From positions 108,004,001 to 108,068,000 of the forward strand of contig NC_058377.1 of assembly GCF_018350175.1 (NCBI RefSeq): 64,000 bases of DNA. The letters run 5' to 3'. A program made the position numbers and the translations under genes. Below the pieces are notes generated by a model. It was not told where the DNA came from. It saw only the letters and a list, made by a program, of their open reading frames with translations, and made no database searches. The stretch is from Felis catus. Its lineage: Eukaryota. Every line of letters starts with the position of its first letter. The first letter of the stretch is position 1. Shown here in pieces: positions 670 through 22,459 of the stretch.

Positions 670-1889
670 CTGTCTGCTGGGAAGTCTCCATCAGGCCGGA
701 AGCCAGGCCCCAACTTGTAGTCACAGCCCAGTGCTCCCTGCCAGGCAGCGGGGGCCAAGGTTCCCTGGAGGTTACTGAGGAGGAGGTGGAGGGTGTGGGG
801 GTTGGAGGTTGGGGGCCACGGGATTGCGGGCAGGGGCCCCCGGGGGGCACCAGAGCTTACCAGAGAAGGATTTTCGCATCCTCAAAGCCAATGGGCTGAG
901 TGGGAATGGGAGGAAATCCAGGGACAGTATCAGGGTTCAGGCGGAAGGAAGAAGGATTGGCCGGAAGGTAGGGAGTCAGAGGATCCCCAAAATACTCATA
1001 GTAGGAGCCTCGCTCCACCCCTGAGGGAGGCAGGCGCCAAGAGTTCGGAAAGGTCTGGCTGGCGGAGCTGTGCCCATCGTTGATGTCTGCGGGGTCCGTG
1101 TACACCAGCACCCCAGCTACCCCGTGCTTGGCCGCATTGACAGCCTGCGGGAGGGGGATGAGGCTGTGTTTAGGGGAAAGGAGAGGGGATGTCATGTCCT
1201 GTTCCGCTCCCTCCCTCACTGCGGCAGCCAGGATGGACCTGTCTTCCCACAGGCAAGATGATGCTCACACAAGTCATTTACTGCAGCCCTGCTCGAGGGA
1301 GCAAAAGACCGCTGGACATAGGCAGGTCGATGCTCATCAGCAGGGCTGTCACGTGATCGGAGGCATCGCACAAGGACACCCTGGGCAGCTGCGTAGGAGA
1401 GCAGGGCCACCGCTCACAGGAGCCAAAAGGCAGAAGCAGCCCAAGTGTCCATGGGCAGAATGAATGGATAAGCCAATGTGTGGTGTACAGCATGCAAGAG
1501 GCAATTACTCAGACTTGAAAGGCAATGAAGTTCTGATACAACATGGATGGGCCTTGAAAACATTATGCTAAGTGAAGAAGCCAGGCACAAAAAGTCAGTA
1601 TTGTGTGATTCCTCTTATATGAGGTTTCTAGAATAGGCAAACTCATACAGCTGGAAGGTAGAATAGAGGTCACCAGGAGCTGGGGAGGGAGAGAGGGGAC
1701 GTTATGTTTAATGGGCACAGAGTTTCGTTTGGAATGATCGAGAGCCCTAGAAATGGACGGTGGTGACGGTTTGCACAACATTGTGAAGCTACTTAATGCA
1801 TCTGCATTGTACCGTTAGAGATGGTTAACACGGTCAGTTTATACTGGTATATTTTAGCACAATGAAAACATAATAGTACACAAAAAAAA

Positions 1890-2372: not shown

Positions 2373-2989
2373 AATCCCAAGCAGGCTGGGAGCTATCCCA
2401 CAAGGGGCTCAATCTCCCAAACTGTGAGATCAAGACCTGAGCCTGTGACCCCCCCAACCGAAATCTACATGAAATTTACTACCCTAACCATTTTATAGCT
2501 TGCTGTTCAGCGGCAGGGAGGACATCCACATTTTATTGCACTACCATCACCCCCACCCACTTCCAGAATTCTTCGTCTTGCACATCTGAAACTCTGTACT
2601 CGCTAAACCCTAAGTCCCTATTCCCTTCTCTCACTCTATACGTTTAAAAAAAAAAAAAAAATCCCGCATTTTTGAAAAACACACATGTGAACTACTCAGC
2701 CAAAATGTTTAGTTGAAAAGATGCAGGCCGGGAGGGAGGGCAACAGGAGGGACTTAAGTTGAATATTCAGGAGAACTTAGACCCCCAGAATATCAAAGTT
2801 TACCTGATCCATTTATTTCCTAAGGCTCAGAGAGGTTAGGGGAGGCATCCAGGGTCACACAGCACATCATGAGTGGTAACAGCACAAATATAGCTCACCT
2901 CTTGTGCCCCAGCCCAGGGCTCCGCAGGCCACTCAACCCTGCTCCTTCCTCTTCCCCTCTCTTCTTCCTGTCCTCTGCTGACCACCCCA

Positions 2990-3036
<47 letters not shown>

Positions 3037-4203
3037 AGTTTCCTGCACTGGGGGCTGCTGCTCACCTTGGCCCCACGCCCTGTACCCCCATAGCGGGTCA
3101 GCGCGATGGTGCCTTCCAGTCTGATGCCCTGAGTCTGTAGCTCCATAAAGTCTTCTTCCGTTCCCCGGTTGGCGTAGACGAGGAGGCCCTGGTCCCAAGG
3201 GGAGGTGATCCTCAGAGCCAGGCCCAGGAAAGAGGGGGTGAGGAAAGGAGAGAGGGAGGCCGAGTGGCAGAGTGAAGGATTTTGATTCTATTTTCCCCGC
3301 CTCACCCAGAGCTTGTAAACTTCCCAAGAACGGAGTCACATCTCATTTCCTCTGGGTCCAGGTGCCCTGTAGTGGGCCTGACCTTGAACATGGGGCCATC
3401 AGCGTTTGTAAAATGGCTAGGCGATGGGCAAAAAGTGTGGCAGTGGAGTTTAGGGGGAAGGGCCCTGGGTCAGGAAGGGAGAATTTGGGGTGGAGCCAGA
3501 GGGGACTGGGCCTCGGCAGAGGGGAGGGAGTGTCCCAGGCCCACCTGCGGGGTTCCAGGGGGAGCGTAGGCGGCATAAGGTGGCACCACATCGGGGCCCC
3601 CCTGCTCCCCAGTCAGGTTCTGTTCACTCTGGCGGCAGGAGAAGAGGACGGTCCCAGTGGGACCCACTGTGGAGGAGGGGCAGCATCAGAGCTGGCCCGG
3701 CAGGTCCCGCCCCACGGGCATCCCCAGACCTGAGTGGGAGGGACCTCACCGACAGCCACCCGGTTGGGCTGCTCCCGGCTGGGGAAGGACAGCAGCACTT
3801 CATACGTGGGGGCCTCCGCCGCGTCCAGGCCTGACTCCGGGTCCCGCCAGCGCTGCAGCAGGAGCTGTGCCAGCGCCTCATCCCGGGGGCTGGAGGCCAG
3901 GTGAGGCTCCCTGGAGAGTTCTCTGCGGGGAGACAGAGGGCCAGGCCCAGGGTCAGGGAGGCGCCTCTGGTGAATAGGAGGGCAGGGTAGACAACCCTCT
4001 CACCTAAGGTTCTCTCGGATCTTGCTGGCATCCAGCTGCTTCATGACGCTCTCAAGGATCTCCAGATCCAGGTCCTGGGAGACCGAGACGCCGGGAGCTG
4101 GTGCGTCGGCCCCTTTGGGAATGGCGAAGTGGCCCAGGATGATCCCCAGGCCCAAGAGGGCAGAGGCCCCCACCAACCCCCCAAGCACCTTCACCCACTG
4201 CAT
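670..4203 (-). CDS. NAALADL1: N-acetylated alpha-linked acidic dipeptidase-like 1 (ileal aminopeptidase), exons 1-6; gene continues beyond the left edge
   Basis: Coding exons 4203-4004, 3922-3750, 3666-3545, 3188-3066, 1144-861, 774-670, all GT-AG and phase-consistent. Spliced product: [30 protein letters not shown] (type II membrane anchor)...[16 protein letters not shown]...[14 protein letters not shown]...[23 protein letters not shown]...[20 protein letters not shown], typical of the M28B/PSMA-like family with a PA domain. Confidence 0.96.
1435..1945 (+). mobile_element. Old L1 (L1M-type) 3' end fragment with (AAGA)n tail
   Basis: Typical L1M 3' text (CCCAAGTGTCCA...GAATGGATAA...CTTGAAAACATTATGCTAAGTGAAGAAGCCAGGCACAAAA), ending in an A-rich tail expanded to (AAGA)n at ~1889-1945. 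Confidence 0.8.
2260..2460 (-). mobile_element. Can-SINE, degenerate
   Basis: Reverse-complement layout: poly-T/TTTATT, (GA)n, then body GGGCTCAATCTCCCAAACTGTGAGATCAAGACCTGAGC. Confidence 0.8.
2991..3035. repeat. (CA)n microsatellite
   Basis: Perfect CA run in NAALADL1 intron 4. Confidence 0.95.
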
Positions 4204-4233
4204 CCTGTGGAGTCTTGGCCAGCTGGGGTCACT

Positions 4234-4296
4234 CCTTATAGATGGGTGTCAGGTCTAGTTAACCATTACCCCATGGGTGGCCCTGCCCTTTGGCCC
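4234..4296 (-). promoter_or_regulatory. NAALADL1 proximal promoter: TATA box, HNF1-like site and HNF4 DR1 site
   Basis: Minus-strand TATAAGG at 4234-4240; GTTAACCATTACC at 4258-4270 (two mismatches to HNF1 consensus GTTAATNATTAAC); minus-strand GGGCCAAAGGGCA at 4284-4296 (HNF4 DR1). Confidence 0.65.
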
Positions 4297-4994: not shown

Positions 4995-5405
4995 AATCCA
5001 TTCACCCGTTCATCCATCCATCCACTATTTATCCACCCGCCCTCCTATTCCCCCACCNNNNNNNNNNNNNNNNNNNNNNNNNNNNNNNNNNNNNNNNNNN
5101 NNNNNNNNNNNNNNNNNNNNNNNNNNNNNNNNNNNNNNNNNNNNNNNNNNNNNNNNNNNNNNNNNNNNNNNNNNNNNNNNNNNNNNNNNNNNNNNNNNNN
5201 NNNNNNNNNNNNNNNNNNNNNNNNNNNNNNNNNNNNNNNNNNNNNNNNNNNNNNNNNNNNNNNNNNNNNNNNNNNNNNNNNNNNNNNNNNNNNNNNNNNN
5301 NNNNNNNNNNNNNATCCATTTTTCTATCCACGCATCCACCCACCCTCCCATCCATCTATTCCTTTATTCACTCCTTCTCTTATACCTGCAAGAATCCATT
5401 CATCC
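4995..5405. repeat. (CCAT)n-like simple repeat spanning an assembly gap (N 5058-5313)
   Basis: Degenerate CATC/CCAT units on both sides of the N run. Confidence 0.75.
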
Positions 5406-7805
5406 AGCTCTGTGCAAGACCCGTGTTAGGGCCTGAGGAGGAAGAGGTGCCCAAGACTTCAGGTCCAGAGGGGAGACAGGCAGGCTTTGGGCTCAACCAT
5501 GTGGTAAGTGCCCCTATAGAGGGAGGACCAGTGTGTTCCCAGTGGGGAGAATGTGGAATTCTAAGAGGGAACATTTGAGGGGATCTTCCAAGGATGAGAA
5601 GGCATTCAGCAGGCAGAGAAGGCAGGAGCAGGCCATCCGTGCAAATGGCCCAGCATGCGCAAAGGCTGAGAAGGAGAGGAAGATACCAAGTTCTCACTAT
5701 AAATGTTGATTGGGCCCCTTCTGGGCCTCAGAGAGCCAGGCAGGGTGGAAAGATCCTTGGGGCTCAAGCTGTGACTCCTCCTACCCCCATGACCTATCTT
5801 GCCTTGGGCCTCTCCCCAGCCAGGCTGCAGCCCATTGATTGTCCCACAGATGCCCCAAGAGCTGGGCGAGCCGGGCAGGGTAGACTTGGTGTGTGTGTGA
5901 TTTCACAGCCCACTCCCGGAGCAGCCCCCTTCCTGCTCACAACCCTGTTTTGTGGGCACCACCTGCCCCCCACCCTCCTGTGTCCATCCCCCCTGGTGCT
6001 GCTGGTCAGGAGGACAGCATGGGAGGGCTATGGGGGGGTTTAGTGTGATCAGTGGTTCAGGGAGGCACACCAGGAAGCCACAGTTTTTGCAAGGTGGTTA
6101 TCAGCACGCCAGATATGACCTTGGATCTTATCAGAAGCCTGTTAGTGTGGGGAGCGTACACATTCCTGAGGACCAGGAGGACTGTCACCACCTGGCAGGC
6201 AGTGGGAGGGACGTCAAGATCGGCTGATAAGTTGAGAAACAGACACGGTGACGACGGCATGAGGAACAGCCCCACGGTCCCACACCACCCCCTCCTGGAG
6301 GGATTTAGCCGCTTGAACCTGTGAAATTACAGATGCAACACGTGGACAAGGGCGTGTGACATCTCTGTGTGCCATCTGAGAACCCCAGCTCAGGCTGTTG
6401 GAGTCAGCTGGTGTCTACGCTGCATTCTGCACCGGATGTAAACCTGGCCAATTTTCCTTTCCCCATCTTGGCTCGGTGGCTGGTGTGGCCCCTCCCTGAA
6501 CATTTTGGATTGTGGTGTTGATGGAACCACTTAAGGTAGCTACCGCGTTCTCTTTATTTTCCCACCTCACTTGTTGATCCTGCTGCCTGCAGGAGTTCTC
6601 CTGTCCCTCCAGGACCCCTGATCCATTGGTGCCAGCTCTTCCCACTTTCCCTCTCCTCCCTCCTGGCCTCGCCCAGCCCCTTACAAAGCCTCTCCACCAC
6701 CGGCTTCCTCTTCTGCTTTGGTCACATTCGCTGGGGAAAAAAACCTGGCGCTCTGCCCACTCTGCACCTGTACCCTTGACCCTGAATGGGCCTGCAGAAT
6801 CACGTGACCTCACTGGTCTTGCTTTACCTTTATGAGCCCAAACCTCAGGCAGGCTCTCAGCACTGCCCAGCGGTCCTGTTGTCTTTCCCTGGTCCTGGCC
6901 TGCTCACCCTTCCCCACTCCCGGATGGAAGCTTCGCCCTCACTGAATCTCACTGAATCACCCTCGCTGAATCTCCGGAGCCCAGAACAGAGCCTGGTACA
7001 TAGGAGGCACTCAGCACATGCCCGTCGAATGGATGGAAAGCCGCCTTGGACCAACGCACCTCCTCAGCGTCGGGCAATCATGGCCCAGCTATCTGGGATT
7101 TAAGGAGCAGAACGCAGGGGGCCCGGGGCAACCCCAAGGGATACAAAAGGTGGGCTCAGAACCTCTGGGAAACAGACCCCATCTGAATGAGCCCCAGTGG
7201 GATCGCTGAGGTGGCCACGGGTGGGGGCCTGCATGACACAAGTGCCCTCGTGAGACGGGGATGTGGGATCTAACAGTCCTCCAGGGGCGGATGTTTCCAG
7301 AGGGTGCTGCTGCTGGGCCGCGGGATCGACCCAACCTCACAGGCAGGAATAGCAGCCCCTTCAGGTGGGCTGCTGGGAGCCTGCTGGGGTACCCCACTCC
7401 ACCCTGCTTCCACGGGGCCCCCGAAGCCACGTTGGAGGCGTGGGTAGATGCACCAGAAGTAGGCTACTTGCCAACCCTCGCTGCATGCTAACAACTCCCC
7501 GAGCCCGCACTGGGTCACCGGTCCTCGCGGGGGCCTCTGAAGTGGGCATGTTGCAGATAAAAGAAGCACGCGTGGTTACTCGGTCGAGGCCACACGGGCT
7601 GGCACGTGGCGGAGCTGAGGGAGCAGGACCTCTTCTCTCCAAAGCTACACCACCTCTCAGGCTCCAGGCGGAGAGGGGCATCCCATTCTGCTCCTCGCAA
7701 GGCGGAATCACGGGGACGCAGGAGGCTGGTTTGCCAACCCAGCCTCAGTGCCTTGAAGACAGAGAGGCCTGGACGATCCGGGGGCACAGCTTGTGAATGG
7801 CACAG

Positions 7806-7807
<2 letters not shown>

Positions 7808-7838
<31 letters not shown>
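7808..7838. repeat. (GT)n microsatellite
   Basis: Perfect GT run. Confidence 0.95.
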
Positions 7839-7841
<3 letters not shown>

Positions 7842-8592
7842 AAAGACCTGGGAATGTCCCGGGGCCCACATGGCTGTGCTGTGGGACCCCCTCCTTGGGA
7901 AGGCCTCCCTGCCTTGCTGCCTTGCTGTGTCAACAGGAGCGGCTGTAGGGACGGAGCTCAGGGCAGGACAATGCTAGGGCCTCCGGGGCACCTGTCAGCT
8001 CTTCTGTGGTTTGGAGACAAGTGCGCAGAGAGGGCTCTGTGACCGACTCCATTTCCTGCGGTGTTCACGTAGCCGCATACCTTTGCTTTCCCAGGCTGAG
8101 ATGCTGGAGGCTTTGGGGGGAAGCAGGCTCAAAGGGGATCATGCTTCCGGTCTGAGCATCAGATGATTCCCTTCAGGAAAATGGCAGGATTGCTGTTTTG
8201 TAACAGCTGGACCGCCTTCAAGAACTGGTCAGGAAGTGGGGGGGGGGGGGGCGGGGGCGCCTCTCGGACTCCTAGAACCATCCAGGCCCTGAGGGTGGAG
8301 TCCTGGAGGAGGCAGCTGCTAGGTCAGAGCTCAGCTCAGCTCTGATCAAATCAAACCTTCACTAATCAAATCTGTCGGGAGTTACTGGCCTGGGCGTGAT
8401 CCCACCGGGGCTGGTGTAAGTCAAGCTAGGTCTGAAGAGGGGCCGCAAACCTGAATTTCCATCCTCTTGGTTAGTGTTCCCTGCAGTGGGTATGAGGCAG
8501 AAAGATGGCCCCAGTCCTTTCGTGTCATACTAGAGAATTTCTGCCCAGTACATTTTATCACCCTTAGGGGTCATGGGGCTTTGAAAAACATT

Positions 8593-8998
8593 GCTCTTTT
8601 TTTTTTTTAATTTTTTTTCAACGTTTTTATTTATTTTTGGGACAGAGAGAGACAGAGCATGAATGGGGGAGGGGCAGAGAGAGAGGGAGACACAGAATCG
8701 GAAACAGGCTCCAGGCTCCGAGCCGTCAGCCCAGAGCCTGACGCGGGGCTCAAACTCACGGACTGTGAGATCATGACCTGGCTGAAGTCGGACGCTTAAC
8801 CGACTGCGCCACCCAGGCGCCCCGCTCTTTTTTTTTTTTTAATATTTATTTTTGGGAGAGAGAGACACACACAGAATCAGAAGCAGGCTCCAGGCTGTCG
8901 GCACAGAGCCCGACACGGGGCTCGAACTCACAAACTGTGAGATCATGACCTGAGCCGAAGTCAGACGCCTAACTGACTGAACCCCCCTGGGTGCCCCT
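8593..8998 (-). mobile_element. Two Can-SINEs, the younger inserted at the tail of the older
   Basis: Inner copy ~8600-8823 flanked by a GCTCTTTTTT duplication. Outer copy ends at 8998 and is flanked by TGAAAAACA(T/C)TG(C/T)TC. Confidence 0.85.

Positions 8999-9091: not shown

Positions 9092-9129
<38 letters not shown>
9092..9129. repeat. (CA)n microsatellite
   Basis: Perfect CA run. Confidence 0.95.
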
Positions 9130-9132
<3 letters not shown>

Positions 9133-9172
9133 TCGATTTCTTGTATCCTCCTTTAAACTGGTTTCATCATCT

Positions 9173-9715
9173 TGATCAGGGAGCACGAGGCAAGCTGACA
9201 GGCCGCAAACACCCCCCTCCCCCACCAAGGTGGGACTTGTGTGACATTCCTTGGGCACTCCTGGCTGCCCGAGAACAAAGGAAAGGGGAAAAACAGATGG
9301 TTAACTGATAGAGATCATAGTCCCGAAGGACCTAAAAGTCTCCATCACCCCTCCATAGTGAGGTGGGGAACAAAGGCAGAAAGAAATGGCAGCTAGAACT
9401 CAATTTCCTTCTAACCAGCAGCCCATTGACAAATAAATACTTGGGGCAGGCAGAGTAAAACGTTTCTCCAGAAACTCCTTACAGTCTTAATGCTAATGAT
9501 TTGCTGGAGAGAAAACCGCCTTAGCTTGACAATAGCTAGGCCTCCGGTAACCTTTGAGTCTTTAGCATATGAAAATCTCACTGGAAACTTCCCCTGGACT
9601 TTAACCAGTCTCTCTTCAGGGTTCCGGGGCAGCTCTTCCTGCCCACGGGTCCTGTCTTTCTTGGTCGTCGGCTCCAGACCCCACGAGCCCCACAGTCACC
9701 CCAAAAACCTCATCA
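9173..9715 (+). mobile_element. Solo LTR, probably ERV1 class, carnivore type
   Basis: Starts TGAT and ends ATCA (inverted termini), with a perfect 4-bp TSD ATCT at 9169-9172 and 9716-9719; 543 bp. Strand is tentative. Confidence 0.8.
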
Positions 9716-9757
9716 ATCTTGCTGGCTCTGTCCTCTTCCTCCTTAAGGAGTTGTTTT

Positions 9758-9931
9758 TCTTTTTTAAATAAGTTTATTTATTTTTGAGAGAGACAGACAG
9801 CACGCAGGAGGGGCAGAGAGAGGGAGAGAGCATCCCAGGCAGGCTCCGCACTGCCCGCGCAGAGCCCGACTTCCGGGCTCGGTCCCAGGAACTTGAGCTG
9901 AAATCAACCCACTGAGCCACCCAGGCACCCC
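9758..9931 (-). mobile_element. Can-SINE, internally deleted
   Basis: SINE body ending CCACCCAGGCACCCC; TTAAGGAGT repeated on both flanks. Confidence 0.8.
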
Positions 9932-10468
9932 TCTTTAAGGAGTCTGAACACCAAACCAAATGAACCATGCTCCTGTCATACAGGAAGGCAGCCAGCCGCA
10001 GCCAGGGCAGGAAGAGTCCCATGGGTGTAGGGCAAGAGGTCTCAGAGTGTCAGGTGTTGGACCCCTGTGGAGCTCCCACTACCAGCCCCCACCCCTGCCC
10101 ATGATTGGCCTTATAAAGGAGAAGAGACTTCTCCGAGGTCGCAAGGTGGGTAGTGGCTCTTCCAGACCTTCCCTAGTCTCTTTCTGCCCTTTGGAGTTAG
10201 ACCTGTGGCCTCCATCCTTGGGGGGGGGGGGGCGCTTCTAGTCCCACCCCAGTGCTTATCACGGGGACATTGCCCTTGAGGCTGACGCCACCAGGCCTGG
10301 AACCTCTTCCGGGGTGATGGGAGTTCAGGGCCAGGGAACCAAGGCGGGGGGGGGGGGTCTCAGAGGGGGCCCAGGGACCAAGCTCATTTTGGAGCTGGTG
10401 ACCTCCCACCCTACCTGATTCCCAGGGCCCACAAACACGCGGGGAGTGGCTGCTCAACTGCGGAGAAG

Positions 10469-10474
10469 TTTATT
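10469..10474 (-). other. Polyadenylation signal of the candidate gene
   Basis: TTTATT on + in otherwise GC-rich sequence, 220 nt after the candidate stop codon. Confidence 0.6.
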
Positions 10475-10694
10475 GCTGGGACCTGCAGAGGAGCTGCTGG
10501 AACGTCTTCCCGAGGAGACGACCAGTTTCCAGCCTCGGGCCTGGCCAGGGCTGACGCTGGTGTCTGTGGGTGGCGGGAGCACCAGGCTGCAGGACGAGTG
10601 CTGTCTCCTGGGAGCTGGGTTGCTACAGGCAAGGACGGCTGAGTGAGCGGCTGGGAAGGCCTGCCCTTGCTCCCCACGTGCCACAGGGGCGCTG

Positions 10695-12464
10695 TCAGGG
10701 CAGCGGGGACAGCGCCACCCCCTGGACGGCCCGGGCATCCTCCGGGACAGCCTGGGCCTCCTCCTCCGGATCGGCCTGGGCTCCCTCCTGGATGGCTTGG
10801 GCTCCCTCGTGGACGGCCTTCACCTCCTCCTGGAGGGCCTCTGCTTCCTCCTGGAGGCTCTTATATGACAAGTTCAGCTGGAACAAAAGGTTGCAGGGCC
10901 CAGAGGTGGGTACGGACCCCGGACAGGACTGTCTGAGGCCCGCTATGAGGCCCTCTAGCTGGGCTGGGAGGCAGGGAGGAGGGGGAGGCACAACGAAGAA
11001 AGGGGGTCCCGGGCTGAGGGGCTCACCAGCCTTTGCAGCTTCTCCCCCAGGGCCAGGTTGTCTGCTTGGATGGTGCTCAGTGACTCCCGAAGTCTAGAAT
11101 GGAAAGGGACCCGCGTCAGCCCCCAGGCTCTTGTCCTAAGCAGCTTCCCCGCAGCGCCCAACACGCGTCTCCTGCCTGGGCTGTGTGACCTGGAAAGGCC
11201 ACCTGGGAACGGGCTTTCACCAAGGGTCCAGTCTTGTCCTGGCAAAGCCATAGGTGGGGGCGGGTCCCCCCCCCCCCCCCAGTGACCGTGACTCACAGCA
11301 GGAGACCCAGACCGAAATGAAGAGTGTGTCTTCCTCTTCTCCAGCAGGAGAAGGGCCGGCTGCTCTGTCCCACAGGCTAGCCATCCCAGCCTGTTGGGCT
11401 GCAGCGGGGACCATGACAGAATTCTGCGTGGTTCCAGGCCAGCAAGAGGGTCGGCCCCGGAAGTAGCCCGGCCCGAGTGCTCTGGGTATGAATCAACGTG
11501 CCCACCCCTCGGATCTCTGCTATGGGAGCCCACGTGCAGCCCGGAGGGAATGTGTCCCCCTGCCCCACCCCCCAAACCTCTGTCTCCAGGCAGAGGTCTG
11601 ACCCTGGCATCACCACGGAGGGCCAAGTGGCCGCGGGATTACACAGACTCCAGAGCCTGGCACCCAGAGAACAGAGCCCCACCCCCGTTGCTCCACAGAC
11701 CAAACTGCTCCCTCCCAAGTTCTTGGACAGTTAAAGGTGGGGGTCCCCTTGCAGGCAGCCTTGCTGACCAGGCATGCGGGCACCCAGTTGCCCGATGGGA
11801 AAGAGCGGTCGCCTCCTGCACCTGTGGGGCAGGTTCCGCTCACACAGAAGGAGGGCACCGATGCTGGGGAGGGAGGGGACCTGCTGGCCAGTGAGGAGGT
11901 CATCCAGTGCAGAACGGTGAGCAGGCAGAAGAGGGGAAGGAGGAGGGGCACGCGAGGGTGCAAACCCACCGCTGTCAAGCCCGAGGCCCTGACCTCAGTG
12001 GGGGGGGGGAGCCCTGTCCCCCCACCCGCCCCCACCTGCCCCGGCCCAGCTCACCTCATGCAATCATTGTGTAAATGGCTGATTTCCTGTGAGGTCCGCC
12101 GGGCCCCCCAGTCTTCCTTGTCCAGGAACTGGTCCCCCTGGATCTCTGCGTCCCTGGGCAGAGTGCGCAGCAAGGGTTGGACCAGAGGGTCTAGAGGCTG
12201 GGGGAGGGCCTGGGGAGGGGGGCAGGCCCGGGCCCAGGTCTGCGCATCCCAGGGCCGAGTCCTGGCCCAGGTCTGAATGTTAACAGAGAGAAGCACCCTC
12301 TGCCTCCCTCCCCTGCACACACTCACTCAGCCTTACCCCTCGGGGTCTTTGGACTCCTTGGGCTCCGCTGTGCTCAGGAGTATAAACAGGAATGTGACGG
12401 TAGGTTCCGGCTGCAAGTTCCGCGGTTGCTCTGAAGAAGACGGCTTTGGCAGAGAAGGCGCCAT
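10695..12464 (-). CDS. Candidate uncharacterised spliced coiled-coil gene (possibly frameshifted or a pseudogene)
   Basis: Exons 12272-12055 (phase 0 to 2), 11093-11027 (2 to 0) and 10877-10695 (0 to TGA) have GTGAG donors and pyrimidine-rich AG acceptors and splice in frame: ...SQEISHLHNDCMR|LRESLSTIQADNLALGEKLQRL|LNLSYKSLQEEAEALQEEVKAVHEG... AATAAA at 10474-10469. An upstream exon 12469-12337 has GTCACCATGG (ATG 12464) but ends 1 nt out of phase. Confidence 0.55.
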
Positions 12465-12844
12465 GGTGACTGAAGGGCAGAAGGCTGGCGGCCAGGGAGA
12501 CTGGGTCCCCTCACACCGTAGAGCAAGACAGCGGGGCTGGTGGCCGGCAGTCCAGAGCTCCTCTCCGGCCGGGGAAGCGTTTCTCCAGCCACCTGCCACC
12601 CTCCCTGCCACCCCTGCCGTCTGCCTTGGGAGGCCCTGGTGCTTCCTGTCACCTCTAAGACTGGCTCCCCGGAGACCTGAGGGTCTTCTGGCTCCTGCTT
12701 CTCAACAGGCTGCACCTCTGGCTTCACCACGGGTGTAGAGTGGGCTCTTCGTCTGCCCCTGAGAGACTGAAGGAGACAGAAGCCCGGTTGGTGAGGCACG
12801 TCCGCCATCCTGCTGGTCTCCCCCTTTCCAGCCTTGTCTGGTTT

Positions 12845-13052
12845 TCTTTTTTTAATTGTTTATATATTTTTGAGAGAGACAGACAGGGAGCTGGGGAGGG
12901 ACAGAGAGAGAGGGAGGCACAGAATCCGAAAGCAGGCTCCAGGCTCTGAGCTGTCAGCCCAGAGCCTGATGCGGGGCTCGAACCCACGAACCGCAAGATC
13001 ACGACCTGAGCCTAAATCGGACGCTTAGCCGACGGAGCCACCCAGGCGCCCC
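12845..13052 (-). mobile_element. Can-SINE
   Basis: Full-length body with TSD CCTTGTCTGGTTTTCTT at 12832-12848 and 13051-13067. Confidence 0.92.
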
Positions 13053-13134
13053 TTGTCTGGTTTTCTTGACGTAGCCTCCGGTCTGGAGAGCCTCCACCAC
13101 CAGTTCTGTCTGGCAAACCAGACCCCTCAAAGTT

Positions 13135-13328
13135 AGGATTACCACATTTAGCAAATAAAGCGCAAGGAAGGGTACCAGTGAAATTTGAATCTCACATGAA
13201 ACCGAATACTTTTAAAAGCGTTAAGTATGGCCCACGCAGTGTTTGGGAAATACTTAGACTAAAAAATGATTCATGGTTTATCTGAAATTCAAATTTTACT
13301 AGGTGACCCGCATTTTATCTGGCAACAT
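13135..13328. mobile_element. MER53-like hAT MITE
   Basis: Imperfect palindrome: GGATTACCACATTTAGCAAATAAA...AAATTTGAAT versus ATTCAAATTT...TTATCTGGCAAC. Confidence 0.7.
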
Positions 13329-13837
13329 GCTACATGCTGGTAATATTTTAGAAACCGAACCCTTGCAAATGCAAGGTATAGGGGGTGGGGGCGTGACGGG
13401 CACCCTGTTGAAAGGAATCCTATAGAAGCTTGTAAAAAAGTGGAGAATCCCTCCCGTTTGGGGCATAGAAATCATCTATCGATGAGACACCGAGAAACAA
13501 ATAGTGTGGCATTCAAGACCCTCTCTTATGTACACCCCTGTTTCCAACCCCCTTAATACGCCACTGTCCCTGAACAGGTCTCTGCTCAGACCGGCCAGGA
13601 GCCTCACTTCCCAACACCAGCCTGAGCTGCCCCCACCGCCACTCTTGCCCGTGCTGTTCACCCCTCTCCTGTTCCCTCCCTGCTCTGTAATCTGAGCTGA
13701 ACCCCACTCTTTTCTCTGCTGAGCAGATGTGCCTCCCCGGGACCCCCGTGGACGGGTTCACATCCCTGAGCCTAAATATGCATCTGTGTCTACGAAGTGA
13801 TGTTACTAGCAGCTTCTCCCCAAGTGACAGGAAGTCT

Positions 13838-14028
13838 TTAAATATATATTTTTCAGTGTTTATTTTTGAGAGAGAGAGAGAGAGAATGCGATCGGGGGAG
13901 CACAGAGAGAGGGAGATGGGCTCTGTGCTGACAGCAGAGAGCCCGATGCGGGGCTCGAACTCACGAACCCTAAGATCATGATCTGAGCCGAAGTCGGATG
14001 CTCAACTGAATCACCCAGGCGCCCCCCG
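13838..14028 (-). mobile_element. Can-SINE
   Basis: SINE body with degenerate TSD CCCA(A/G)GTGACAG(G/A)AAGTCTT. Confidence 0.88.
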
Positions 14029-14069
14029 CCCCCAGGTGACAGAAAGTCTTCAGTCAATAGAGGGAATTG

Positions 14070-17771: not shown

Positions 17772-19739
17772 TCATTCAACCAGGAGATCAAACTGCTCAG
17801 CAGCTTCGAACTCGGCATTCATGGCTGCAGCCCATTCATCCAGCTCTGATTTCTAGAGGAAGAGAAATGGGGGGGGGGGGGGGAAGGAGGGGACAGGTGA
17901 GTGAGGAAAGGGGCACGTTGGCCAGGGCATTTCTACCTATACCCTGCAGGTGCTGAGCCCCAGGCCAGCCTGAGTCCCGGCATGTCTCCCAGTGTGTCCC
18001 GTGTGCCAGCAGAGGAAATGCCCTGCCCCCCACTCACCAGGATCTCCGGAACCTTCTTTTTCTTTCGTTTCTCTTTCACAGCAGGTGGAGAGATTCCGGG
18101 GAGAGTGGTATCTGGGGCCCAGGGCTTCACAGGGACCCTGGGGACTTCGGTTAACTTTGAACACCTCACAGGTGAGACTCTGGCCAAGTCTTCTGACCCC
18201 AGCAGGCCCTCGAAGCCAAAGCAAGACCGGCGGCCTGGGGTGGAGGTGGAGGCAGAGCCGAGGGTCTCCAGCCGGCTGTAGGATCGCCTGACTTTCTTAG
18301 ACATTTCCAAGTCTCTGGCGTCCAGGTCTTCCCTGGAGTTGGACTTGACATTCAGGGGGCACAGCACAGGAGTAGGGGTGGGGGTGATGGGGACACTGCT
18401 TGTCTTGAAGGGCTCCTCCCTAGCAGGCTCCTTGCTAGAAGGGTTGTTTTCCTTCTCCAAGAAAAAAGCAATCTGTACCAGGGCAGAAGAGAGAACAACT
18501 CCTTGTTACTTAGCTGTTATTACTCACTTCCACAAAGGTCCGAGGAGATTCAGTGTGGAAAGACGCATAGAACACTTATAAAGGAAAAGACAGTTCGAGC
18601 AACACATCAGACCTTGAGACAAATTTGGGAAGAACAATCTGCCATCGCTTCTGAGTGCACTTCTGTAACGCAAGAGGACTTATCACCACTTGGTGGTGTC
18701 GGCTCTGTCTCCAAACAACACGTGACCAGAAGCTGGCCAACCTCTACTGATGCAGGCGTCCATCACGGGTCGTCCTGACCAGTGCAGTAACCTCTTGACC
18801 TCTCTTCCTGCTTCTGCCTGTGCCCTCTGTGGTCTACATGTCACACAGCTGGCAAGAGTTTTCCTAAAATGTGCATCCAGTCAGTAAGTACCTATTGGTC
18901 ACGGGCCCCGTTCCAGGCCCCGTTCTAGGCACTGGGAGAACAGGGAGTAGAACAGAGAAAACCCGGTCTCCGTGGGGCTTCCGTTCCCGTGGGAGGAAGA
19001 CAGAGCTAACGAACAGGGAAAAATCATGTAGCACGTCAGAGGTACTAAGCGCTTCGGAAAAAAAAAACAGGACAAGATAGGACTGGGGGTGGGTTGGAAT
19101 TTTAAGTAGGTGGAGCCTGCTTGGAATTCTCTCTGCCCCTCTCCTGCTTCAAAATAAAGAAATAAACTTAAAACAATCAAGAGAGGAAAAAAAAGAGAGG
19201 TCCACGCGTTGGCTCCTTAAAAATTCTACTCTCAGCTCAAACGCGACTTCCTCAGAGAAGGTATTTCTTACCATAGAGCAGAGACCAGCCCCTCCTACCA
19301 CTGCTATTTACTGCTGCCACCCTGACCTATCTCGTCCGGCAGCCACCACTCTCGGATTTTGGCTTGTTCACTGGTCAACCATCACCCCAACTGGAATATG
19401 AGGTTCCTGACAGCAAGGGGTCTTCGTCCGTCTGGGTGACCCTGCCTACATCCAGCACCTTCCGCAAAGCCCTGCGTGCAGCAGGCATTCCATAAATGCT
19501 CAGTGAACAGATGTACACAAAATTCCACACTGAGCTTTCTGGCAGCCAAGACAAGGTAAGAAACAGGACAAATTCCGTCACTCTTGTGGTCTAACAGAAG
19601 TATGTTGGTTATCAAGAGAGATACTTCCTAGCTACAAGCACTAGAAATCTGCCCCAGGAGTCTTAGTAAAGGGGATGCTGAATATGGGTGCCTGGGTGGC
19701 TCAGTCAGTTAAGCACTTGACTCTTATTTAATGTTTATT

Positions 19740-19777
<38 letters not shown>

Positions 19778-22459
19778 CGCTCGCGCACGAGCACACGAGT
19801 GGAGCCGAAGCAGGCTCCAGGCTGTCAGCACAGAGCCCAACGCTGGGCTTGAACCCACAAGCCACGAGATCATGACCTAAGGTGAAGTCAGACGCTCAAC
19901 CGACTGGGCCACTCAGGCGCCCCGCATCCGACTCTTGATTTTGGCTCCGGTCATGATCTCATGGTTGGTGAGATCAAGCCCTGCTTTGGGCTCCACACTG
20001 TCAGCACAGAGCGTGCTGGAGATTCTTGTGCGTGCGTGCTCTCCCCCTCTCTCTCTCCCCCTTCTCTGCCTCTCCCCCACTTGCATTGTCTCTCATATAA
20101 ACTAAAAAAAAAAGGGGGGATGCCGAACAAAATGGGGGTCACCCTAGACTACTTCCTCCTCATCCCCTACAGCCAAACAGCCGTCCAAATCCTTGCAGTT
20201 TTGATCAGTATATCATCAACCTATCATTCAACCAACAAGAATGAGGGATTACCACGGGGAGGCAGAAGTCCCCGCCCTCAAGACCACACGCAAATATTCT
20301 CAGGTATCTGTAAGGCCTAACGAGAACTACGAAGAGAAACACAACAGCGACAGGGTACAAGTGATCAGGGAAGGCTTCCAGGAGGTGTCCTTTAAGCCGA
20401 GTCCTGTGTGATGGGATGGTCATGTGGTGAGCCGAGGGGCAGAGCATCACTGTGCCCTTCCCTCCCTTCAGGCCCCCACCATGTCACTTCAGTCAAGTCC
20501 TCCTACCTGGCCTCGGGTCCCCAGCAGCAGGCTTTTTCCAACCCGGTCTCCACCCAGACCCAGGAGGGATTTTTCTGAAACACGCCAGCATGCCTCGGGG
20601 ACTACCGGCTCCCCAAAGGCTCCTGCGGTGCCAAGGATGGAGCCCAAGCTCCCGAGTGTGGCTTTCATGCTTCAGGAACTGCTCTGTCTTAGCCTGTTCC
20701 ATCCCCTAACAAGATCGCCAAAGGCACACTAAGCAAGCTGCCCTTCTGCACGCCTCGGGATTTTGTGAATTAAGAGGTCGTGGCAAACACAGCTTCCTGT
20801 GCCCAAACACTACTGTCTTTAAAGACTCAGTTGAAACCTTCCTTCTTCTGTGACACAATCGCAGGGACAGCTAGTCTGGGTTAGGTGCCTTCCTGACCTC
20901 TAGTACTTTTCTTATTGCAGTTCTCAGCACACTAGGCTACTATCGCTTGCTCATCGGTCTTTCTCCCCACTTGACTGGGAGTTCCATGTGCTCCTAAAAG
21001 GCAGCTAGCGTTTTCCATTTACTGCATCCCCAGGCACAGGTTTTCTGTTAACGAAACACCCTTAGTAACTCCTGCTAAACCAGTACAAATGCTGTACGTT
21101 TCTCTTACAACAACCAGTACTCACAAACAGAGCAGACTGGAAAGGAGGAGGAAGAGTTGGGACACAGCTCAGTTCTTCAAGGAAAACAATATAGACTATT
21201 AGAACGCCACAAGACCACAATGTATTAAGTCCAGAAGGAGTGCGCAACACGGGCGATGTATGTAGGTTTCCAAAGGCAACCTGTTTCCAAATACAGATGG
21301 TTCCCAACTTACTGATGGTCGGACTCAAAATTCTTCAACCTTATTACCGCGCAAAACTGATACACATTCAGCAGAGATCACATTTCAAATTTTGATCCTT
21401 TCCCAGGCTAGTGATACGGGGTAAGATACTCTCTCTCAGGCAGTTCCCGATACGCGATCACGGAGGGTAAACAATGGATAGAACGTACAACCATCCCATT
21501 GTTCGCTTTCATACAGAACTCAAGAAATTAAGTGGTATCCAACTCTTTGTTATAAACAGGCTTTGCGTTAGATGGTTTACCCAACGGCGCGCTAACGTAA
21601 GTGTTCTGAGCCCGTTTAAGGCAAGCTTCGCCAAACTATGACGTTCAAAGGATTACGTGTATGAAATGCATTTCTGGCTTAGGATATTTTCAACTTACGA
21701 TAGGTTTATTAGGATGTAACCCCGTCCCAACGGGAGGAAGATCTGTACCTCAAAACAGTTACCTGGGCAGATGGGAGCAGCCAGTATGCCCTGCCCCATT
21801 TCTAGAGTGCTCCCCACTCAACTAAGCAGATGAAAATGAACTCACCCTTGGGCTCCTTCGAGGCGTGTGCACAGATGGGGTCTGTGGAGACAGTAATAAC
21901 CGATCACTTAGCCACCCCCAATTTTGGCTCCCAACCCACAACCCTTCTGTTAGCCCTCACCTTTACGGTATGGGCTACGATCTTCTTCAAAACGATGGGC
22001 TTTCTGACAGGAGCCGCAGGGGATGCCTGGAAAAGAGGAGGGAACATGAACTACACATTACTCCACCGGCCTCCGAGGCAGAAACTGAGGAATCCCGGGC
22101 TCACCTTGGGCCAGATTTCAGGGAGGGTGCTGGGGAGATCAGGGCCTGATTTCCGCTGGGACCTCCGCGGAGACTGAGTAGAAGACGGGGTCCTGGGCCC
22201 TGGGAAGAGAAAAAAGTTAGGAGGTAGGGGAGGACTCTAAACCTCCGAGTCTAGAGAACAAGTTCAGGAGAGGGCGAGAGAAAGTTCCCAAACAAGCCCT
22301 TCGGGGCTTCTTCCCGGGAAGGAGCCTCCTAGAGCGGTGGGGGGAGGGCCTTCCTCACGGGGCTCCGTCCCTCAAACGGCTCGGCCCCAGGCTCCCGCGC
22401 GCCTTCCGCTCACCGGAGCGTTGGGCGGCCCCTCCGGACCGCGTTCGCCTCTCGGACAT
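17772..22459 (-). CDS. CDCA5: Sororin (cell division cycle associated 5), 252 aa
   Basis: Exons 22459-22414, 22199-22105, 22026-21961, 21881-21846, 18472-18038, 17852-17772 total 759 nt. Product has MSERRTRSGG, a KEN box (LEKENN), YSR and FGF motifs, and C-terminal KSELDEWAAAMNAEFEAAEQFDLLVE. Confidence 0.97.
19686..20112. mobile_element. Plus-strand Can-SINE interrupted by an antisense Can-SINE (~19727-19923)
   Basis: The head GGGTGCCTGGGTGGCTCAG...GCACTTGACTCTT resumes as GCATCCGACTCTTGATTTTGGCTC after the inner element. Confidence 0.85.
21294..21745 (-). mobile_element. Tigger5/MER47-like Tc1-mariner DNA transposon
   Basis: TA flanks on both sides, CAGAT...ATCTG termini, and reverse complement GGGGTTACATCCTAATAAACCTATCGTAAGTTGAAAATATC. 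Confidence 0.8.

What the first reader, a model, noticed from the sequence alone, without database searches (positions are those of the whole stretch)
10469..12469. Hidden spliced coiled-coil gene between CDCA5 and NAALADL1
Seen: three minus-strand exons (12272-12055, 11093-11027, 10877-10695) with canonical GTGAG donors and pyrimidine-rich acceptors. Their phases match (0-2, 2-0, 0-stop) and they join into a continuous amphipathic heptad pattern, QEISHLHNDCMRLRESLSTIQADNLALGEKLQRLLNLSYKSLQEEAEALQEEVK. A lone AATAAA lies 220 nt after the stop. The ORF track shows these only as unrelated fragments. Knowledge: I know of no named protein-coding gene at this position in the human cluster, though an uncharacterised LOC model may exist. 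Inference: a lineage-restricted, fast-evolving gene of about 200 aa, possibly germ-cell expressed. The zipper RLRESLSTIQADNLALGEKLQRLL loosely resembles the Chibby-type zipper RLRRRNQQLEEENNLLRLKVDILL, but that pattern is generic to leucine zippers.
Basis: partly seen in the sequence, partly recalled or inferred. Interest (0 to 1): 0.85.

Follow-up and report, generated by a model that had tools for sequence, protein, structure and literature searches.

The report
Cat ortholog of mouse Gm550
The three exons are real and belong to a small leucine-zipper protein gene found in all placental mammal groups (mouse Gm550), which cat RefSeq already annotates as extra 3' exons of CDCA5 ("sororin isoform X2") and which nobody has studied.

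Summary
Reader exons 11093-11027 and 10877-10695, the donor at 12055, the TGA and the AATAAA (10474-10469) match an existing Felis catus RefSeq model exactly (XP_023095812.2, "sororin isoform X2"; 100% exact mapping).

The exon starts at 12153. Two further coding exons lie upstream (12808-12653 and 12443-12337), which removes the "1 nt out of frame" problem. The standalone ORF is 203 aa.

The gene is not hidden. Orthologous models exist in all four placental superorders, including mouse Gm550 (52% identity, E 6e-33). They are named "uncharacterized LOC…" or are fused to CDCA5 as "sororin isoform X1/X2/X3".

There is no Pfam family, no solved relative and no dedicated paper. One mouse proteomics list mentions Gm550.

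The protein is mostly disordered. It has a conserved hydrophobic helix, an FLDxEDWG motif and a 4.5-heptad leucine zipper with invariant Cys and near-invariant Asn at 'a' positions, followed by a fast-evolving 7-aa repeat tail.

It is probably a self-associating adaptor co-transcribed with CDCA5. It is real but already annotated, so interest is modest.

The parts
12653..12808 (-). Coding exon 1 of the standalone gene. ATG at 12808-12806 in the context GCAGGATGG. It encodes MADVPHQPGFCLLQ|SLRGRRR…EPVLE and ends at the donor GAG|GTGACA (phase 0). It contains an internal acceptor (ctccttcag|TCT, exon start 12766) that the CDCA5-fused RefSeq isoforms use.
   Evidence: Exact mapping of P0072 residues 82-119 to 12766-12653. 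Splice contexts. The ATG-proximal peptide M[VA]D[MV]AHQPGF is conserved in seal, whale, deer, cattle, pig, rhinoceros, titi monkey and guinea pig models. Open frame 12374-12808.
12337..12443 (-). Coding exon 2 (107 nt, phase 0 to 2). It encodes PSSSEQPRNLQPEPTVTFLFILLSTAEPKESKDPE plus the first two bases (GG) of the Gly codon completed by exon 3, and contains the conserved hydrophobic helix motif. An in-frame ATG at 12464 (caccATGG) lies just upstream of the acceptor. It serves as the start in the Iriomote-cat, wolverine and pangolin models.
   Evidence: Exact mapping of P0072 residues 120-155 and of P0024 residues 1-43 to 12464-12336. Acceptor ctgccaaag|CCG and donor GAGGG|GTAAGG. F137, L138 and L142 are 100% conserved in 45 sequences.
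12055..12153 (-). Coding exon 3 (99 nt, phase 1 to 2). It encodes DAEIQGDQFLDKEDWGARRTSQEISHLHNDCM(R).
   Evidence: Exact mapping of P0072 residues 156-188 to 12152-12054. All spliced orthologs join …DPEE|DLEIQE… here. Exon versus upstream intron: 0 versus 12-25 gap columns in six non-felid mammals.
11027..11093 (-). Coding exon 4 (67 nt, phase 1 to 0). It encodes LRESLSTIQADNLALGEKLQRL, the centre of the leucine zipper.
   Evidence: L189, L193, N200, L203, L207 and L210 are 93-100% conserved.
10695..10877 (-). Coding exon 5 (60 codons plus TGA). It encodes LNLSYKSLQEE… and a heptad-like 7-aa repeat tail built from 21-nt tandem repeats.
   Evidence: Tandem Repeats Finder reports period 21, 4.7 copies at 10763-10859. 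Tail length and repeat number vary widely between species.
10450..10694 (-). 3' UTR with the poly(A) signal AATAAA at 10474-10469.
   Evidence: It is the only AATAAA/ATTAAA on this strand between 10300 and 12850.
21846..22459 (-). CDCA5 (sororin) 5' coding segments, as mapped blocks 22459-22412, 22197-22105, 22026-21961 and 21881-21846. The donor after 21846 (CCAAGG|GTGAGT, phase 0) is spliced to 12766 in cat RefSeq isoform X2.
   Evidence: Exact mapping of P0072 residues 1-81. Donor context.
18038..18472 (-). CDCA5 large exon (Sororin_middle, ending …KKKKVPEIL). In the felid 'sororin isoform X1' models its donor is spliced to 12766 instead of to the normal last exon 17852-17775.
   Evidence: PF09666 at E 5.9e-21. 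Mapping of P0090 (fishing cat, 414 aa). Canonical last exon KSELDEWAAAMNAEFEAAEQFDLLVE found.
11306..11390 (-). Optional 84-nt, frame-preserving cassette exon (LGWLACGTEQPALLLLEKRKTHSSFRS) used in one Iriomote-cat model. It would interrupt the zipper between C186-M-R and L189. It has a weak donor (GG|GTCTCC). Its status is uncertain.
   Evidence: P0024 residues 77-104 map exactly to 11389-11306. No other species' model contains it.

Best explanation
The stretch 12808-10450 (minus strand) is the cat ortholog of mouse Gm550. This is a five-exon, placental-wide, uncharacterised protein-coding gene lying directly downstream of CDCA5.

Shown:
- Exon structure, reading frame and identity to an existing cat RefSeq model.
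- Orthologs in all four placental superorders.
- A conserved core and a predicted long helix.

The 203-aa product has, in order:
1. An acidic, Pro-rich disordered N-terminus.
2. A short, strongly conserved hydrophobic helix (TVTFLFTLL).
3. An acidic Trp motif (FLDxEDWG) followed by a basophilic RRTS/QRTS site.
4. A 4.5-heptad leucine zipper. The 'a' positions are I179, C186, L193, N200 and L207. The 'd' positions are L182, L189, I196, L203 and L210 (numbering of P0072).
5. A variable Ala/Gln/Glu 7-aa repeat tail.

Inferred:
- The zipper forms a parallel in-register dimer. This rests on the buried Asn at 'a', which favours dimers in classical zippers. In such a dimer the invariant Cys186 residues face each other, so a disulfide is possible.
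- The conserved N-terminal motifs recruit partners. The protein would then act as a small dimeric adaptor, not an enzyme or a DNA binder.

The same exons are also reached from two CDCA5 donors through a conserved internal acceptor at 12766. The locus is therefore at least partly co-transcribed with the cell-cycle gene CDCA5. Expression is probably highest in proliferating or germ cells.
For: -: the exon peptide finds spliced mammalian proteins with identical junction positions.
- cat XP_023095812.2 maps to the window residue for residue. All sites are GT-AG.
- a profile search gives 82 hits. All that carry an organism name are placental mammals: carnivores, ungulates, whale, bats, pangolins, mole, primates, tree shrew, lagomorphs, rodents including Mus Gm550, sloth, anteater and elephant.
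- cat versus mouse Gm550 is 52% identical over 121 aa, E 6e-33.
- Logan contigs of only 1.0-1.5 kb carry uninterrupted ORFs of 169-207 aa spanning the junctions (horse-like P0023/P0038, camel-like P0028). Such contigs can only come from spliced RNA.
- the exon has no indels, whereas the adjoining intron has many.
- AlphaFold2 with 46 sequences gives helix 172-244 with pLDDT above 90 over 180-230, helix 133-143, and disorder elsewhere.
- a/d positions are 90% conserved on average, other zipper positions 74%. C186 is invariant and N200 is 98% conserved.
- Gm550 is listed among quantified proteins in a mouse microglial-line proteome (PMC12977177).
Against:
- No codon-level dN/dS was computed, because no orthologous DNA was available.
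- In cat and other felids, every NCBI model I saw for these exons is a CDCA5 isoform, not a separate gene. The putative 5' end has no CpG island, and a SINE sits about 55 nt upstream of the ATG. An independent promoter in cat is therefore unproven.
- Dimerisation is inferred from the heptad pattern only. The complex prediction gave no verdict.
- In 87% of species a Pro follows the zipper, so the single long helix of the cat model may not be general.
Confidence: 0.8

Rival explanations
1. The exons are not a gene of their own in cat. They are alternative 3'-terminal exons of CDCA5. The biologically relevant products would be sororin-zipper chimeras. One would carry the sororin N-terminal 81 aa. 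The other would carry sororin without its C-terminal cohesin-binding domain. Either would be fused to the zipper module.
For: - Cat, cheetah, tiger, lion, jaguar, clouded leopard, fishing cat, hyena, dingo, sea lion, camel, bat, baboon, macaque, orangutan, tree shrew, beaver, pika, deer mouse and anteater models are all named 'sororin isoform X1/X2/X3'. They join CDCA5 donors to the same acceptor.
- Both CDCA5 donors and the acceptor at 12766 are phase 0, so the fusion stays in frame.
- There is no CpG island at the putative standalone 5' end.
Against: - Many species have standalone models with a conserved start peptide upstream of the shared acceptor (MVDMAHQPGF…). That peptide would not be conserved if it were only intron.
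- Mouse Gm550 and the pig, cattle, deer, ferret, seal, hare, guinea pig and sloth LOC genes are annotated as separate genes.
- Gene predictors report only in-frame fusions, so the in-frame property is partly a selection effect.
- Read-through models are a common annotation artefact for closely spaced same-strand genes.
Confidence: 0.17
2. The ORF is not translated. The locus would be a spliced non-coding or read-through transcript, its open frame kept by chance or by GC-rich composition, and the protein models would be prediction artefacts.
For: - No direct cat expression or peptide evidence was obtained here.
- GC content is 62-71%, which favours long spurious ORFs.
- An older cat model (P0037) reads the last exon in a different frame.
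Against: - The frame is intact in more than 60 species across about 100 My of placental divergence, with position-specific conservation: invariant C186, D169, G171, E178, L182, L203 and L207.
- The conservation follows a heptad periodicity.
- The exon is free of indels while the flanking intron is not.
- Gm550 protein was reported in a mouse proteome.
Confidence: 0.03

Closest known systems
Mouse Gm550 (predicted gene 550, LOC225852) and the mammalian 'uncharacterized protein LOC…' orthologs
   Same: Same conserved core: EPTVTFLFTLL, FLDxEDWG, RTSxE, and the zipper with Cys and Asn at 'a' positions. Cat and mouse are 52% identical over 121 aa, E 6e-33. Junction positions are the same, and fusion models show the same position next to CDCA5.
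   Different: - The cat protein has a longer N-terminus. Mouse starts at the equivalent of Val99 of P0072.
- Felids have Leu instead of the usual Pro after the zipper.
- Felids end in exon 5 (…ALSPLP*). Most other mammals splice from …ALFQ| to a further exon (QPSSQ…).
- The repeat tail differs in every lineage.
Felis catus RefSeq XP_023095812.2, 'sororin isoform X2' (CDCA5)
   Same: Residues 82-270 are encoded letter for letter by window exons 12766-12653, 12443-12337, 12153-12055, 11093-11027 and 10877-10698.
   Different: The RefSeq model starts at the CDCA5 promoter and carries 81 aa of sororin. The module has no sequence relation to sororin: Pfam PF09666 and every other Pfam family were absent from the four cat exon-encoded peptides scanned. 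The name reflects transcript structure, not homology.
   Same: Small, mostly disordered protein with a C-terminal leucine zipper. A language-model search lists a 'chibby homolog 2' cluster at score 0.89.
   Different: There is no Pfam Chibby match at E up to 1 in the four cat exon-encoded peptides or in 18 orthologs. The atlas score is below the tool's own 0.9 line for anything more than a lead. The resemblance is generic to zippers.
bZIP and other classical dimeric leucine zippers (GCN4-type)
   Same: Leu at successive 'd' positions and a conserved Asn at an 'a' position. In GCN4-type zippers (established knowledge) this specifies parallel dimers.
   Different: There is no basic DNA-binding region. 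The segment before the zipper is acidic (FLDKEDWG). No bZIP Pfam hit was found. The only matches are weak and generic: ZapB, HALZ, GAS and CASP_C, all far below their cut-offs.

Membership tests
Gm550 / uncharacterised placental LOC family | Significant full-core sequence similarity to family members | tested here: met
   Exon peptide against 1.84 billion representatives: E down to 3e-39. Profile search: 82 hits, cat-like sequences among the best. Cat versus mouse Gm550: E 6e-33.
Gm550 / uncharacterised placental LOC family | Position immediately downstream of CDCA5 on the same strand | tested here: met
   In the window, Sororin_middle lies at 18472-18038, the last CDCA5 exon at 17852-17775, and the gene at 12808-10450. 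In other species this is shown only indirectly, by CDCA5-fused models, including the rodent Peromyscus.
Gm550 / uncharacterised placental LOC family | Same exon junction positions and phases | tested here: met
   The junctions …DPEx|D.E.Q…, …DC.R|L.ESL… and …LQNL|P..LY… coincide with GT-AG sites in cat.
Sororin (CDCA5) family | Sororin middle region (PF09666) or C-terminal Sororin domain within the exons in question | tested here: not met
PF09666 appears only in fused models that include the CDCA5 exons.
Chibby (PF14645) | Match to the family profile | tested here: not met
   No PF14645 match at E up to 1 in the four cat exon-encoded peptides or in 18 orthologs. Only an atlas lead at 0.89.
bZIP transcription factors | Basic DNA-binding region directly N-terminal of the zipper, and a bZIP profile match | tested here: not met
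   The preceding segment is acidic (DAEIQGDQFLDKEDWG). No bZIP_1 or bZIP_2 hit.
Parallel dimeric leucine zipper (structural class) | Four or more heptads with hydrophobic a/d positions, and polar Asn at one 'a' position | tested here: met
   The 'a' positions are I179, C186, L193, N200 and L207. The 'd' positions are L182, L189, I196, L203 and L210. They are 50-100% conserved in 46 sequences. Helix pLDDT is above 90.
Parallel dimeric leucine zipper (structural class) | Actual self-association | tested here: inconclusive
   The complex prediction returned 'no answer'. This needs biochemistry.

The most novel reading that the evidence does not exclude
CDCA5 and the Gm550-like gene may form a conserved conjoined unit. 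Its chimeric product would be sororin that has lost its C-terminal cohesin-binding domain and gained a dimerising zipper. In the short form, it would be only the sororin N-terminal 81 aa plus the zipper. This chimera would be a regulated, functional variant that modulates cohesin or WAPL antagonism in placental mammals. The shared in-frame acceptor would have been kept for that purpose.
Probability: 0.1. Interest if true: 0.6.

Novelty: already known. Interest (0 to 1): 0.3.

Why it matters
As a discovery of a gene it does not matter much. The exons are already in cat RefSeq, and orthologs, including mouse Gm550, are in public databases.

What remains open is biology. This protein is conserved across placental mammals, has a sharply conserved zipper and two conserved short motifs, has no Pfam family, no solved structural relative and no dedicated paper, and is physically and transcriptionally coupled to the cohesion regulator CDCA5.

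It is also a useful annotation lesson. The 'sororin isoform X1/X2' names hide an unrelated protein module, and felid annotations lack a separate gene record for it.

Tried and rejected
I therefore have no orthologous DNA, no dN/dS and no check of splice sites in other species.
- Metagenome scan. I did not scan metagenome contigs for host DNA, because some hits could be human.
- Joined model. For folding I used the database protein P0072, which the window encodes exactly.
- Human proteins. P0051, P0054, P0056, P0089 and P0091 appeared by name. I did not fetch, align or use them.
- Complex prediction. Two copies of residues 125-246 gave no verdict (score 0.06, controls not run). This is no evidence either way.
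- Pfam. The four cat exon-encoded peptides gave nothing above cut-off. The 18 orthologs gave only weak generic coiled-coil hits.
- PDB. A profile search found only designed coiled coils and one viral stalk, at E 0.004 or worse.
- ESM Atlas. It returned unnamed clusters at 0.91-0.92, and named families (Takusan, Chibby-2, CEP128) at 0.89 or below. I treated these as leads only.
- Rfam. No family in 9500-13500.
- Literature. No hits for 12 LOC identifiers, for CDCA5 isoform/splice/read-through phrases, or for CDCA5 + NAALADL1 + uncharacterized. 'Gm550' gave 22 papers. Of the three I opened, one uses it as the gene name (PMC12977177) and two as an equipment model. Most of the rest look by title or DOI like glucose meters or a DOI string.
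- Acceptors. The ortholog models point to 12154/12153.
Full report
**1. The observation**

- Donor CATGAG|GTGAGC after 12055.
- Acceptor ccattctag|A before 11093.
- Donor AGGCTG|GTGAGC after 11027.
- Acceptor ttttgttccag|C before 10877.
- TGA at 10697-10695.
- One AATAAA at 10474-10469.

The phases fit. AG plus A gives the Arg that joins …NDCM to LRESL…, and the next junction falls between codons. The quoted peptide is correct.

The 5' edge of the first exon (12272) is the weak point. I confirmed that arithmetic from the sequence.

**2. What it is**

I searched the model exon by exon by reference. The joined cat sequence was never built or sent.

The peptide of 12272-12057 was scored against 1.84 billion representative proteins. 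It found 18 mammalian proteins at E down to 3e-39.
- Several are spliced models of 176-254 aa.
- They enter the first exon much further downstream, at …DPEE|DLEIQE….
- In cat that entry point is the acceptor ctctgcccag|G, so the exon starts at 12153.
- With this acceptor the ATG exon, which ends in phase 2 at GAGGG|GTAAGG, is in frame. The '1 nt out of frame' problem disappears.

Names from the databases show that these are NCBI, Ensembl or submitter models. They are called 'uncharacterized protein LOC…' in ferret, seals, zebra, pangolins, bats, camel, pig, deer, cattle, lemur, bonobo, hare, rabbit, guinea pig, squirrel, mole-rat, sloth and elephant. The mouse model is 'predicted gene 550 (Gm550, LOC225852)'. 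In felids, dog, sea lion, camel, several primates, tree shrew, beaver, pika, deer mouse and anteater they are called 'sororin isoform X1/X2/X3'.

One of these is Felis catus XP_023095812.2 (P0072, 270 aa). Every one of its residues maps exactly to the window:
- CDCA5 blocks: 22459-22412, 22197-22105, 22026-21961 and 21881-21846.
- The exons in question: 12766-12653, 12443-12337, 12153-12055, 11093-11027 and 10877-10698.

The window is therefore domestic cat, and the 'hidden' exons are already in RefSeq as an alternative 3' part of CDCA5.

Felid 'isoform X1' models (P0090) join the large Sororin_middle exon (18472-18038, …KKKKVPEIL) to the same acceptor at 12766. They do so instead of using the normal last exon 17852-17775.

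**3. Gene model**

Upstream of the shared acceptor the frame stays open to an ATG at 12808 (GCAGGATGG). It encodes MADVPHQPGFCLLQ. The same start peptide (MVDMAHQPGF.LPQ) heads standalone models in seal, whale, deer, cattle, pig, rhinoceros, titi monkey and guinea pig. This argues that it is a coding first exon and not merely intron of a CDCA5 read-through.

| Exon | Coordinates (minus strand) | Length |
|---|---|---|
| E1 | 12808-12653 | 156 nt |
| E2 | 12443-12337 | 107 nt |
| E3 | 12153-12055 | 99 nt |
| E4 | 11093-11027 | 67 nt |
| E5 | 10877-10695 | 183 nt, including the stop |

The total is 612 nt, or 203 aa. All introns are GT-AG. The 3' UTR is about 220 nt.

A shorter 158-aa form would start at ATG 12464, as in the Iriomote-cat, wolverine and pangolin models.

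Context:
- CDCA5 ends at the poly(A) signal 16292-16287.
- NAALADL1 begins near 4248, with [12 protein letters not shown]….

**4. Evidence that it is coding and expressed**

Frame and conservation:
- (a) The frame is intact in more than 60 named species from all four placental superorders. Cat and mouse are 52% identical over 121 aa, E 6e-33.
- (b) Conservation is position-specific. D169, G171, E178, L182, C186, L203 and L207 are invariant in 46 sequences. F137, L138, L142, W170 and N200 are 98% conserved or better.
- (c) Gene callers working on unspliced genomic contigs of other mammals translated exon 3 together with the intron upstream of it. Against cat, the exon part has 0 gap columns and 58-73% identity. 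The intron part has 12-25 gap columns and 37-60% identity.

Transcript and protein evidence:
- (d) Logan assemblies hold contigs of only 1.0-1.5 kb that carry uninterrupted ORFs of 169-207 aa across all junctions (horse-like P0023/P0038, camel-like P0028). That is possible only for spliced RNA.
- (e) Gm550 is named among quantified proteins in a mouse microglial cell-line proteome (PMC12977177).

What I could not get:
- As a consequence, no junction counts and no dN/dS.

**5. The protein and how it probably works**

AlphaFold2 on P0072 with a 46-sequence alignment gives three features:
- Disorder up to residue 130.
- A short helix at 133-143 (TVTFLFILLST, pLDDT about 74).
- One long helix at 172-244 (pLDDT above 90 over 180-230).

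Column statistics give a clean heptad register.
- The 'a' positions are I179, C186, L193, N200 and L207.
- The 'd' positions are L182, L189, I196, L203 and L210.
- Mean conservation is 0.90 at a/d positions and 0.74 elsewhere in the zipper.

From established knowledge of GCN4-type zippers, a buried Asn at 'a' favours parallel in-register dimers. In that geometry the invariant Cys186 residues would face each other.

After L210, 87% of species have Pro, which would act as a hinge. Felids have Leu.

The rest of exon 5 is a weaker heptad (L218, L225, V232, I239, with Ala between them). It is built from 21-nt tandem repeats whose number differs greatly among lineages.

Before the zipper lie the conserved motifs EPTVTFLFTLL, D.E.QE, FLDxEDWG and R-T-S-x-E. 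In cat the last reads RRTS, a basophilic kinase-type site.

My best reading is inferred, not shown. The protein would be a small self-associating adaptor whose disordered arm carries two docking motifs and a phosphosite.

It is not a bZIP, because the segment before the zipper is acidic. Pfam gives only weak generic coiled-coil matches. A PDB profile search finds only designed coiled coils. The homodimer prediction gave no verdict and counts for nothing either way.

**6. Relation to CDCA5**

Two CDCA5 donors (after 21846 and after 18038) and the acceptor at 12766 are all phase 0. Both fusions therefore read the zipper module in its conserved frame.
- The short fusion keeps only the sororin N-terminus.
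- The long one keeps the Sororin_middle region but replaces the C-terminal exon 17852-17775.

From my knowledge of sororin, the middle region holds the KEN and FGF motifs, and the replaced C-terminal exon encodes the domain needed for cohesin binding.

Such models recur in many orders. However, predictors report only in-frame fusions, and read-through models are common for close same-strand genes.

The putative standalone 5' end has no CpG island (CpG o/e 0.3-0.57). A carnivore SINE lies about 55 nt upstream of the ATG.

I therefore keep 'CDCA5 alternative 3' module only' as a live rival at about 0.17. The functional-chimera idea is the most novel reading not excluded, at about 0.1.

**7. Comparison, novelty and verdict**

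This is a member of the Gm550/LOC family by sequence, by synteny in cat and by junction positions. It is not a sororin, Chibby or bZIP family member on the profile tests made here.

No paper in the searched library studies it.

I classify it as already known, with an uncharacterised function, and score interest at 0.3.

Noticed in passing
The frame stays open from here into exon 3 in felid and several non-felid genomic ORF calls (P0001, P0003, P0006, P0009). Rhinoceros, elephant and gray-whale models use acceptors upstream of the main one. The cat equivalent is ccccag|CCT at 12198/12197. This may be an alternative acceptor or a splicing control element.
   Followed up: partly
window 10695-10720 and 11027-11030 (felid-specific changes): Felid proteins end …GVALSPLP* in exon 5. 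Most mammals have …ALFQ followed by a donor and a further exon (QPSSQK…ILQPD…). Felids also have Leu where 87% of species have Pro directly after the zipper. Felids have apparently lost the last exon and the hinge.
   Followed up: partly
P0045 (ENA contig, felid-like, 228 aa), corresponding to window about 12054-12046: In this sequence the in-frame TGA formed by the GTGAG donor of exon 3 is replaced by an Arg codon, and the ORF runs on into the intron (…CMRRAGPGQVG…). The contig therefore carries a changed donor, or a sequencing error, at this site.
   Followed up: no
window 12464-12336, 10860-10459, 8756-8703, 6191-6060 (minus strand): An older cat model (UniParc UPI0005AC3F01, P0037) shares the ATG-12464 exon. 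It reads the last exon in another frame and continues past the poly(A) signal into two further exons towards NAALADL1. This hints at read-through transcripts beyond 10469.
   Followed up: partly
window 12860-13050, 13880-14030, 8530-8840, 9770-9930: Carnivore tRNA-derived SINE copies (GGGGCGCCTGGGTGG… heads, …TCTCTCAAAAATAAA tails) flank the gene. One lies about 55 nt upstream of the ATG at 12808.
   Followed up: no
window about 5050-5320: A run of N (the window holds 699 N in all) lies upstream of NAALADL1 exon 1.
   Followed up: no
window 4003-4248 and 860-1264 (minus strand): NAALADL1 first coding exon ([30 protein letters not shown]…) and an exon resembling the PA (protease-associated) domain, by eye, not scanned. 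The gene runs off the low end of the window.
   Followed up: partly
window about 7800-7930, 9100-9170, 2980-3040: Dinucleotide (CA/GT)n microsatellites, seen as HTHTHT or VCVCVC runs in translation.
   Followed up: no
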